Positions 1,629 through 63,588 of a stretch of 64,000 nt of DNA are shown here, in pieces (position 1 is the first letter of the stretch; every line of letters starts with the position of its first letter). A program made the position numbers and the translations under genes. The stretch comes from Octopus sinensis (lineage: Eukaryota). The notes beneath the pieces were generated by a model. The model saw nothing but the letters and a program-made list of their open reading frames with translations. It was not told the DNA's origin and ran no database searches. The DNA is taken from assembly GCF_006345805.1 (NCBI RefSeq), contig NC_043006.1:25668001-25732000 (forward strand), in the 5' to 3' direction.

Positions 1629-1763
1629 CTTTAGGAACAGTTTTGTAAGCGATAACGAAACCAGAACTGAATGTATTTGGCTTGTTGTAGAATAAATCTA
1701 GCATGGAAGACTTTGTTGTATATTGTTGGATTTCATGATCCAGATGCTCAATAAGAGTGTTTC
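1629..1763 (-). CDS. Coding exon 10 (CUB2, C-terminal part)
   Basis: tattctttttcag|GA AAC ACT ... CCT AAA G|gtaact. Encodes ...[31 protein letters not shown]; ends in a phase-1 donor, so the gene continues. Confidence 0.9.

Positions 1764-63588: not shown

What the first reader, a model, noticed from the sequence alone, without database searches (positions are those of the whole stretch)
1629..63588. Hidden multi-exon gene encoding a secreted or cell-surface MIB/HERC2-CUB-CUB protein
Seen: ten short exons splice with consensus GT-AG sites and matching phases into one 321-codon frame with signal peptide (predicted cleavage ALG|C), MIB/HERC2 signature and two CUB domains, with seven N-x-S/T sequons. 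Known: MIB/HERC2 (Pfam PF06701) is an SH3-like peptide-binding module of cytosolic E3 ligases (Mind bomb, HERC2, HECTD1); in Mind bomb it helps bind the intracellular tails of Notch ligands. CUB domains are extracellular recognition modules. Inference: an intracellular peptide-recognition fold has been moved to the outside of the cell as the N-terminal sensor of a CUB receptor or secreted protein, possibly immune or chemosensory. Similar architectures may exist as uncharacterised proteins in other molluscs; I cannot check novelty.
Basis: partly seen in the sequence, partly recalled or inferred. Interest (0 to 1): 0.92.

Follow-up and report, generated by a model that had tools for sequence, protein, structure and literature searches.

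The report
Octopus MIB/HERC2-CUB membrane protein gene
The ten exons are real and make up the first half of an octopus gene that is already catalogued but unstudied; it encodes a cell-surface protein that displays outside the cell a domain best known from enzymes inside the cell, a placement that also occurs in other animals and in bacteria.

Summary
On the minus strand, ten GT-AG exons (63587 to 1629) join in matching phases into 321 codons with seven N-x-S/T sequons. That peptide is 100% identical to residues 1-321 of Octopus sinensis RefSeq proteins XP_029642199.1 and XP_036362292.1 (LOC115216771, "uncharacterized protein"). The gene is therefore not hidden, and the window holds only 10 of its 17 coding exons.

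The full product (654 aa) reads: signal peptide, MIB/HERC2, four CUB domains, Ser/Thr-rich stalk, one transmembrane helix, short tail. An alternative last exon gives a 562-aa isoform without the anchor.

- MIB/HERC2 scores 74 bits in Pfam.
- A profile of the family's repeat units matches only CUB structures (cubilin 8e-16), and the AlphaFold model's top PDB matches are almost all CUB proteins.
- The two tiny signal-peptide exons are conserved in size, phase and flanking DNA in Argonauta hians.
- Cuttlefish mRNAs carry the same architecture without interruption.

Orthologues or paralogues exist in Octopus, Argonauta and Sepia. Extracellular MIB/HERC2 is not unique to this family: fish, sponge, bivalve, insect and bacterial secreted proteins carry it with SRCR, MAM, LDLa or Ly6 modules. 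An immune or chemosensory role is untested. Interest is moderate.

The parts
63568..63587 (-). Coding exon 1 (20 nt, ATGAAATCCTTTAGTTTGAG, donor gtaagt): Met1 to the first two bases of Arg7, the n-region of the signal peptide
   Evidence: It equals the CDS start of LOC115216771 (L001 10001). The Argonauta hians homologue also has a 20-nt exon 1.
63588..63612 (-). Conserved stretch directly upstream of the ATG (AGTGTGAGAAAAGGAAACTTTCGAA), probably 5' UTR
   Evidence: Nearly identical between O. sinensis and Argonauta hians, while sequence further upstream has diverged. The transcription start was not determined.
38379..38425 (-). Coding exon 2 (47 nt): [15 protein letters not shown], the hydrophobic core of the signal peptide
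   Evidence: It is the most hydrophobic of 15 well-spliced candidates with the right phase. Size, phase and both splice sites are conserved in Argonauta.
30765..30847 (-). Coding exon 3 (83 nt): ...LG|[26 protein letters not shown], holding the cleavage site and the first part of MIB/HERC2
22964..23108 (-). Coding exon 4 (145 nt): [10 protein letters not shown]...[11 protein letters not shown], the rest of MIB/HERC2
   Evidence: PDB sequence matches to MIB1 (4xi6) and HECTD1 (2dk3, 3dkm).
21131..21218 (-). Coding exon 5 (88 nt): [30 protein letters not shown], the N-terminal third of CUB1
   Evidence: Located through homology with O. bimaculoides XP_014773118.1.
12481..12587 (-). Coding exon 6 (107 nt): FHYCQKKL...SCNITVYEG, the middle third of CUB1
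9689..9841 (-). Coding exon 7 (153 nt): [13 protein letters not shown]...[11 protein letters not shown], the C-terminal third of CUB1
   Evidence: It is the best Pfam CUB stretch (residues 159-207).
7664..7748 (-). Coding exon 8 (85 nt): [29 protein letters not shown], the N-terminal third of CUB2
   Evidence: It has the best splice sites of the 135 phase-compatible candidates listed in intron 7, and it matches the RefSeq protein.
4994..5094 (-). Coding exon 9 (101 nt): PLKCQWTL...SYLDIYDG, the middle third of CUB2
1629..1763 (-). Coding exon 10 (135 nt): NTLIEHLD...[13 protein letters not shown], the C-terminal third of CUB2. It ends at a phase-1 donor, and exon 11 lies about 2 kb beyond window position 1.

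Best explanation
The window is a stretch of an Octopus sinensis chromosome (CM016868.1). On its minus strand it carries coding exons 1-10 of the 17-exon gene LOC115216771.

The product is a type I membrane glycoprotein. A signal peptide (residues 1-24, cleaved after ALG) sends it into the secretory pathway. The mature chain starts with a MIB/HERC2 module at the tip furthest from the membrane (about residues 25-97). Four divergent CUB domains follow, each encoded by three exons with the same phase pattern. Then come a Ser/Thr-rich stalk, one transmembrane helix and a tail of about 23 residues. An alternative last exon yields an anchor-less, presumably secreted isoform.

Shown: the exon structure, the identity with the RefSeq proteins, the domain content, conservation in Octopus, Argonauta and Sepia, and uninterrupted mRNAs in Sepia.

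Inferred: cleavage, glycosylation and disulfides. Eight invariant cysteines sit in even numbers per module, including a family-specific pair, C25 and C90, that brackets the MIB module.

Inferred with lower confidence (about 0.5): it acts as a cell-surface binding protein or co-receptor, as other multi-CUB ectodomain proteins do. In that reading the MIB/HERC2 head, an SH3-like barrel that binds short linear peptides in Mind bomb, is the ligand-recognising end.
For: - The exon model is reproduced exactly.
- The 321 aa are identical to XP_036362292.1 and XP_029642199.1.
- Pfam gives MIB_HERC2 72.7-73.9 bits and CUB 26.1 bits (window part) or 37.6 bits (full length), both above the cut-offs.
- PDB sequence hits are MIB1 (8e-18) and HECTD1.
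- A profile of the 19 stacked repeat units hits only CUB proteins in the PDB: cubilin 8.2e-16, neuropilins, PCPE-1, GPR126 and spermadhesins.
- The AlphaFold2 model (pLDDT 63.5) has Foldseek top hits that are nearly all CUB proteins: cubilin CUB5-8 at 3e-16, then neuropilins, enteropeptidase, MASPs and C1r/C1s.
- N-terminal hydrophobic leaders and the ...LG|C... junction are conserved in 9 of 10 aligned family members, and C25, C90, C102, C132, C157, C176, C216 and C247 are invariant.
- The Argonauta hians homologue has the same 20-nt and 47-nt first exons, the same phases, and conserved flanking DNA.
- Sepia esculenta RNA-seq contigs of about 2.5 kb from 114 runs carry an uninterrupted ORF with signal peptide, MIB, 4 CUB and TM. 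The run identities come from PMC10571815.
- C-terminal TM helices are predicted in X1 and in the Argonauta, O. bimaculoides paralogue and Sepia proteins.
Against: - No RNA-seq of O. sinensis itself could be mapped, so junctions 1-2 and 2-3 in this species rest on two annotation sets (RefSeq for O. sinensis, and the O. vulgaris record) plus cross-species conservation.
- No SignalP or TM predictor was available. The leader and TM calls are hydropathy heuristics plus the -3/-1 rule.
- The O. bimaculoides orthologue model starts MQLRPSLWSWNSDV, with no leader. This is most likely a mis-called first exon, but I did not verify that.
- CUB2 alone does not reach Pfam significance, and the structure model has only moderate confidence.
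- Nothing bears on ligand, tissue or function.
Confidence: 0.82

Rival explanations
1. One reading: a previously unannotated gene whose 321 codons encode a complete secreted or surface MIB/HERC2-CUB-CUB protein, marking a unique transfer of a cytosolic E3-ligase module to the outside of the cell.
For: The 321-codon frame, leader, MIB and two CUBs are all present. No paper mentions the locus or the domain pair.
Against: The gene is RefSeq LOC115216771 with two isoforms of 654 and 562 aa. Exon 10 ends at a phase-1 donor, and seven more exons follow outside the window. Leader-bearing MIB/HERC2 proteins with SRCR, MAM, LDLa, Ly6, EGF and TSP1 modules exist in fish, sponge, bivalves and an insect, and lipoprotein-like ones exist in bacteria.
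Confidence: 0.03
2. A chimeric gene model: the leader exons, the MIB exons and the CUB exons belong to different transcripts, and annotation pipelines and the reader stitched them together because the phases happen to fit.
For: Introns are huge (up to 25 kb) and exons 1-2 are tiny. The O. bimaculoides annotations are fragmented and disagree at the N-terminus.
Against: Sepia esculenta mRNA contigs from 114 RNA-seq runs carry leader, MIB, 4 CUB and TM in one uninterrupted ORF. The same 17-exon layout and phases are seen in Argonauta within only 19 kb. Exon 1-2 flanks are conserved. An invariant cysteine pair links the segment just after the leader (C25) to the MIB module (C90).
Confidence: 0.04
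3. The protein is real but is not displayed at the cell surface. The N-terminal hydrophobic stretch is an uncleaved anchor or the protein stays in an internal compartment (ER, Golgi or a secretory granule), so the MIB module acts in a lumen and not outside the cell.
For: Cleavage and localisation were not tested. The leader is unusually rich in Phe and Cys, and the tail has conserved Tyr-based motifs (YRRxIY, Y-x-N) that could be sorting signals.
Against: The layout n-region (K2, R7), 15-residue h-region and A-L-G (-3/-1 rule), combined with a second, C-terminal TM helix and a mucin-like stalk, is the standard type I surface-protein layout. All structural relatives are extracellular proteins. 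A lumen has the same topology as the outside in any case.
Confidence: 0.08
4. The locus is a decaying or non-functional lineage-specific duplicate with no current role.
For: The family has paralogues (O. bimaculoides LOC106877781, and two tail-to-tail copies in Argonauta). The introns are full of transposon debris and a young minisatellite.
Against: The ORF is intact over 17 exons with consensus splice sites. There are only 3 substitutions in 321 aa against O. vulgaris, with cysteines and core motifs invariant across Octopus, Argonauta and Sepia. The cuttlefish member is expressed.
Confidence: 0.03

Closest known systems
Multi-CUB ectodomain receptors and co-receptors (cubilin, neuropilin-1/2, PCPE-1, Neto1/2, CDCP1-type proteins)
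   Same: Both have a secretory leader, tandem CUB beta-sandwich domains with the canonical C1-C2 (and in some units C3-C4) cysteines, N-glycosylation, and in most cases one TM helix with a short tail. They are the best sequence-profile and fold matches.
   Different: None of them carries a MIB/HERC2 module. The octopus CUBs are very divergent: single domains fall below Pfam's cut-off. No LDLa, EGF, F5/8C or MAM partner domains are present.
Mind bomb (MIB1/MIB2), HERC2 and HECTD1: cytosolic E3 ubiquitin ligases that define the MIB/HERC2 domain (PF06701; PDB 4xi6, 2dk3, 3dkm)
   Same: The octopus protein has one clear MIB/HERC2 domain with the R-G-P-x-W-x-W-x-x-Q-D-G-G and N-x-Y-R-x-G motifs (73.9 bits; 35-50% identity to solved domains).
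   Different: It has no RING, HECT, ZZ, ankyrin, RCC1 or DOC domain. It has a leader peptide and a TM helix. A family-specific cysteine pair (C25, C90) replaces residues that are not cysteine in the aligned solved domains and in the 30 nearest MIB domains from outside the family. The O. vulgaris record's name 'E3 ubiquitin-protein ligase MIB2' is a domain-based misnomer.
Other leader-bearing MIB/HERC2 proteins in public databases: sardine 'DMBT1-like' XP_062388284.1, Sycon ciliatum XP_065179576.1, Mya arenaria XP_052791386.1, Mactra antiquata KAL4222501.1, thrips XP_052121385.1, and bacterial lipoprotein-like metagenome proteins
   Same: MIB/HERC2 sits behind a secretory leader and next to classical extracellular modules.
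   Different: They carry 2-9 tandem MIB/HERC2 repeats with SRCR, MAM, EGF, TSP1, LDLa, Ly6 or caspase partners. None of those examined has CUB domains. The cephalopod family has a single MIB/HERC2 at the extreme N-terminus.

Membership tests
MIB/HERC2 domain (Pfam PF06701) | Match to the family HMM above the gathering score over nearly its full length | tested here: met
   73.9 bits against a cut-off of 33.5, profile positions 1-65 of 66, residues 36-95. The same holds in all five full-length relatives.
MIB/HERC2 domain (Pfam PF06701) | Sequence similarity to solved MIB/HERC2 structures | tested here: met
   MIB1 4xi6 at E=8.2e-18 (both of its MIB repeats), and HECTD1 2dk3/3dkm at E about 5e-12.
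Mind bomb / HERC2 / HECTD1 E3 ubiquitin ligases | A catalytic RING or HECT domain plus the usual partners (ZZ finger, ankyrin or RCC1 repeats) | tested here: not met
   Pfam finds only MIB_HERC2 and CUB in the 654-aa product and its relatives.
Mind bomb / HERC2 / HECTD1 E3 ubiquitin ligases | A cytosolic protein with no secretory leader or TM helix | tested here: not met
   There is an N-terminal leader with A-L-G before Cys25 and a C-terminal TM helix at 601-631, judged by hydropathy and alignment. No dedicated predictor was available.
CUB domain (Pfam PF00431) | Match to the family HMM above the gathering score | tested here: met
   The whole-protein score is 26.1 bits (window part) and 37.6 bits (full length) against a cut-off of 21.4. 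Caveat: CUB1 alone scores 19.6 bits and CUB2 alone scores nothing.
CUB domain (Pfam PF00431) | Homology to solved CUB domains, shown with a family profile | tested here: met
   A profile of 19 stacked units matches only CUB proteins: cubilin 8.2e-16, neuropilin-2 1.5e-5, GPR126, PCPE-1, PSP-II, TSG-6 and aSFP.
CUB domain (Pfam PF00431) | The beta-sandwich CUB fold | tested here: met
   The Foldseek top hits of the AF2 model are almost all CUB proteins (cubilin 3e-16, and C1r CUB2 with TMt 0.66 and rmsd 3.5 A). The model confidence is only moderate (pLDDT 63.5).
CUB domain (Pfam PF00431) | Four conserved cysteines forming the C1-C2 and C3-C4 disulfides | tested here: inconclusive
   CUB1 has all four (C102, C132, C157, C176). 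CUB2 has only the first pair (C216, C247). All are invariant in the family. The bonding itself was not tested.
Type I single-pass membrane glycoprotein | A cleaved N-terminal signal peptide | not testable with these tools
   The sequence has an n-region (K2, R7), a 15-residue hydrophobic core and A(-3)/G(-1), conserved in 9 of 10 relatives. SignalP and experiments were unavailable.
Type I single-pass membrane glycoprotein | One TM helix near the C-terminus followed by a basic stop-transfer sequence | tested here: met
   IPYWIYITVAFLILICIVLGCLCWILY followed by RRR in isoform X1, conserved in the O. bimaculoides paralogue, Argonauta and Sepia. This part is encoded outside the window.

The most novel reading that the evidence does not exclude
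MIB/HERC2 may be an unrecognised extracellular binding module as well as an E3-ligase module. On this reading, coleoid cephalopods built a lineage-specific receptor family in which a single disulfide-stapled MIB/HERC2 head on a four-CUB stalk recognises a short peptide epitope of a secreted or surface ligand, with a soluble decoy isoform made from an alternative last exon. If so, studying it and the SRCR-, MAM- and LDLa-linked MIB proteins of other phyla would define a new class of extracellular peptide-recognition domain.
Probability: 0.25. Interest if true: 0.6.

Novelty: new variant of a known kind. Interest (0 to 1): 0.35.

Why it matters
The gene itself is already in RefSeq, so nothing is added to the catalogue.

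What is worth knowing is the placement of the domain. MIB/HERC2 is described in the literature only as a cytosolic module of ubiquitin ligases, yet here it sits at the outer tip of a conserved cephalopod surface protein. The same search shows it behind secretory leaders in fish, sponge, bivalve, insect and bacterial proteins. I found no paper that describes this.

If the extracellular MIB/HERC2 domains bind peptides as the Mind bomb ones do, they would be a neglected class of extracellular recognition module, and the cephalopod family would be a compact case (a single MIB/HERC2 domain) in which to test it.

It also flags annotation errors: 'E3 ubiquitin-protein ligase MIB2' in O. vulgaris, 'HERC2' in O. 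bimaculoides, and a split and probably 5'-truncated O. bimaculoides model.

Tried and rejected
- Motif searches for ALGC, CGG, SPxYP and similar in single frames found nothing useful, because the motifs straddle exon junctions.
- A CUB consensus written from memory found no exon with phmmer, whereas a MIB consensus found exons 3 and 4.
- My first hand-built model used a wrong exon 5 (about 13.0-13.1 kb, with a longer exon 6) and a wrong 31-nt exon 8 (8151-8121). It gave 303 codons.
I did not work around this. I used database proteins returned by the session's searches, whose first 321 residues are identical to the window's product.
- The look-up of encoding contigs found nothing for P0001, P0002 and P0004. 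Only the longest isoform is on record.
- Literature searches for the locus and protein ids, for 'MIB HERC2 domain' with 'CUB domain', and for MIB_HERC2 with 'extracellular' gave nothing relevant.
- I considered unspliced read-through at exon 10 (…KGNLFSF*) as the true end and rejected it, because the RefSeq proteins continue into exon 11.
- I considered whether exon 2 could carry its own start codon. It cannot: there is no in-frame ATG before the upstream stop.
- On statistics alone, exon 1 is weak: 25 ATG-to-donor candidates in the right phase lie upstream of exon 2. Exon 2 is only modestly exceptional compared with a plus-strand control. What settles both exons is conservation in Argonauta and the database proteins.

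Full report
**What is in the sequence**

The window is AT-rich (35% G+C) eukaryotic DNA full of microsatellites and transposon debris. The feature lies on the minus strand.

I located MIB/HERC2-like coding pieces at 30.8 kb and 23.0 kb and CUB-like pieces at 12.5, 9.7, 5.0 and 1.7 kb. I then used a homologue and an exhaustive exon scan to place the remaining exons. The ten exons are 63587-63568, 38425-38379, 30847-30765, 23108-22964, 21218-21131, 12587-12481, 9841-9689, 7748-7664, 5094-4994 and 1763-1629.

- All introns are GT...AG with pyrimidine-rich acceptors, and the phases chain correctly.
- The total is 964 nt, which is 321 codons plus one base.
- The peptide begins [24 protein letters not shown]|CTQDF and has seven N-x-S/T sequons.
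- Two corrections apply. The ATG begins at 63587, not 63588. The frame does not end at 1629, which is a phase-1 splice donor.

**Is it more than chance?**

Yes. An exhaustive HMMER search, using the O. bimaculoides homologue as query, returned a 562-aa protein whose first 321 residues are identical to the model. It is XP_036362292.1, 'uncharacterized protein LOC115216771 isoform X2' of Octopus sinensis. Isoform X1 (XP_029642199.1) has 654 aa.

Both proteins map onto 17 coding exons. The gene is therefore real but already annotated, and the window holds only 49% of its coding sequence.

**The two tiny leader exons**

On statistics alone they are weak. Twenty-five ATG-to-donor candidates in the right phase lie upstream of exon 2. 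Exon 2 is the most hydrophobic of 15 well-spliced, phase-compatible candidates, but a plus-strand control nearly matches it.

Independent evidence settles them:

- The O. vulgaris record has the same N-terminus.
- The Argonauta hians homologue (gene span only 19 kb) has a 20-nt exon 1 and a 47-nt exon 2 with the same phases.
- In Argonauta, a conserved block AGTGTGAGAAAAGG...CGAAATGAAA surrounds the start codon amid otherwise diverged DNA.
- The acceptor tract and donor of exon 2 are also conserved there.
- About 2.5-kb RNA-seq contigs from 114 runs encode a 630-aa homologue with leader...VLG|CPQNFLD junction, MIB, four CUB units and a TM helix in one uninterrupted ORF.
- Two of those runs are Sepia esculenta larval transcriptomes, according to PMC10571815.

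**Domains**

MIB/HERC2 is unambiguous. It scores 73.9 bits against a cut-off of 33.5 and covers almost the whole profile. It also matches the solved MIB1 and HECTD1 domains.

CUB is marginal by Pfam on the window part: 26.1 bits in total, CUB1 alone 19.6 bits, and CUB2 alone nothing. It reaches 37.6 bits in the full-length protein. Two further tests support it:

- A profile of 19 stacked repeat units from five family members matches only CUB proteins among PDB sequences: cubilin 8.2e-16, neuropilins, GPR126, PCPE-1, spermadhesins and TSG-6.
- An AlphaFold2 model built on the family alignment (pLDDT 63.5, all-beta units) has Foldseek top hits that are nearly all CUB proteins. These include cubilin CUB5-8 at 3e-16, neuropilins, enteropeptidase, MASPs, C1r/C1s and Neto2.

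Each CUB is encoded by three exons with the phase pattern 1>2, 2>1, 1>1, as expected from tandem duplication of a three-exon unit.

**The whole protein and how it probably works**

Isoform X1 is laid out as follows: leader (1-24), MIB/HERC2 (about 25-97), four CUBs (about 100-551), a Ser/Thr-rich stalk, a TM helix (601-631), and a tail RRRIYVNTESFIYNKHLLKNENLEI. Isoform X2 uses a different last exon and lacks the stalk, helix and tail, so it is presumably secreted.

In the mature window-encoded part, the eight cysteines are invariant across ten sequences and occur in even numbers per module: C25/C90, then C102/C132/C157/C176, then C216/C247. C25 and C90 are not cysteines in the aligned MIB1 and HECTD1 domains, nor in the 30 nearest MIB domains from outside the family. 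This suggests a family-specific disulfide bracketing the MIB module, as expected for a domain adapted to an oxidising compartment. That is an inference.

The best-supported mechanism is a type I surface glycoprotein that acts as a binding protein or co-receptor, like other multi-CUB ectodomains, with the MIB/HERC2 barrel as its distal recognition head. The ligand, tissue and pathway are unknown. An immune or chemosensory role is neither supported nor excluded.

**Comparison with what is known**

It is not a Mind bomb, HERC2 or HECTD1 ligase. No RING, HECT, ZZ or ankyrin domain is present, so the names 'E3 ubiquitin-protein ligase MIB2' (O. vulgaris) and 'HERC2' (O. bimaculoides) are domain-driven misnomers.

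The MIB+CUB combination was seen only in coleoid cephalopods:

- O. sinensis and O. vulgaris
- O. bimaculoides, with a split orthologue and a paralogue
- Argonauta hians, with two tail-to-tail copies
- Sepia esculenta

None of the other best-150 MIB relatives has CUB.

An extracellular MIB/HERC2 domain is not unique to cephalopods:

- A sardine 'DMBT1-like' protein has five SRCR, four MIB/HERC2, D8C and Ig domains plus a TM helix.
- A Sycon ciliatum protein combines eleven MAM, EGF, LDLa, SRCR and TSP1 domains with four MIB/HERC2.
- A Mya arenaria 'mucin-like' protein has a leader and eight MIB/HERC2.
- A Mactra protein pairs Ly6/uPAR with MIB/HERC2.
- A thrips protein pairs LDLa with MIB/HERC2.
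- Metagenomic bacterial proteins with lipoprotein-type leaders carry MIB/HERC2, one of them with a caspase domain.

I found no paper describing any of this.

**Verdict**

On novelty, this is an already catalogued but uncharacterised gene. As a protein it is a new variant of the multi-CUB surface-receptor kind. Interest is moderate (0.35). The more general point, that MIB/HERC2 is also an extracellular module in several phyla, is the part worth following up.

Noticed in passing
window 22054-22907 (intron 4, starting 57 bp downstream of the exon 4 donor): A 95-bp unit repeated 9.0 times at 99% identity, so a very young minisatellite right next to a coding exon. Its translation gives repeated open frames but no coding signal.
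   Followed up: partly
window 13987-14530 (+), intron 5: Remnant of a Tc1/mariner-type transposase (HTH_28/HTH_23 and HTH_Tnp_Tc3_2 hits), broken into several frames.
   Followed up: partly
window about 53400-55430 (+), intron 1: A degraded retroelement on the strand opposite to the gene. There are several 100-140-aa open stretches, one with a weak reverse-transcriptase hit (RVT_1, 20 bits, below the cut-off).
   Followed up: partly
window about 16900-19100: The same peptide-coding fragment ([43 protein letters not shown]) appears four times, twice on each strand (+17633, +18801, -17122, -18291). This points to repeated copies in both orientations of an element of about 1.2 kb inside intron 5.
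   Followed up: no
window 34701-35928, intron 2: A G+C-rich block (48% in that 2-kb bin against about 33% around it) made of nested tandem repeats with periods of 62, 172 and 350 bp.
   Followed up: no
window 710-845 (-) and 6654-6776 (-): Two copies of a short repeat whose translation reads ...VSIPRL...CV(L/F)EQ...FHVAP..SA.., probably a SINE-like element common in this genome.
   Followed up: no
L008 (Argonauta hians BAAFZT010000031.1) 3001-22109 (+) and 24486 onward (-): Two family members (648 aa and 581 aa) lie tail to tail about 2.4 kb apart, so this is a local duplication. The Argonauta gene spans 19 kb, against 85 kb for the O. sinensis CDS range (L001 10001-95016).
   Followed up: partly
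Database records of relatives (no window coordinates): There are annotation problems. The O. bimaculoides orthologue is split into LOC106875589 (402 aa, with N-terminus MQLRPSLWSWNSDV in place of a leader) and LOC106881348 (245 aa). Older models end by intron read-through (…GKYVLHIH). The O. vulgaris orthologue is named 'E3 ubiquitin-protein ligase MIB2'.
   Followed up: partly
Proteins P0016, P0021, P0054, P0100, P0087, P0015, P0022 (no window coordinates): MIB/HERC2 repeats sit behind secretory leaders together with SRCR, MAM, EGF, TSP1, LDLa, Ly6/uPAR or caspase domains in a fish, a sponge, two bivalves, a thrips and uncultured bacteria. There are also very large leader-bearing MIB proteins in diplonemid protists.
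   Followed up: partly
L001 100536-100538 (outside the window, about 5.5 kb beyond the end of the called gene range): The next called gene on the O. sinensis locus encodes a 92-aa ribosomal protein L37ae.
   Followed up: no
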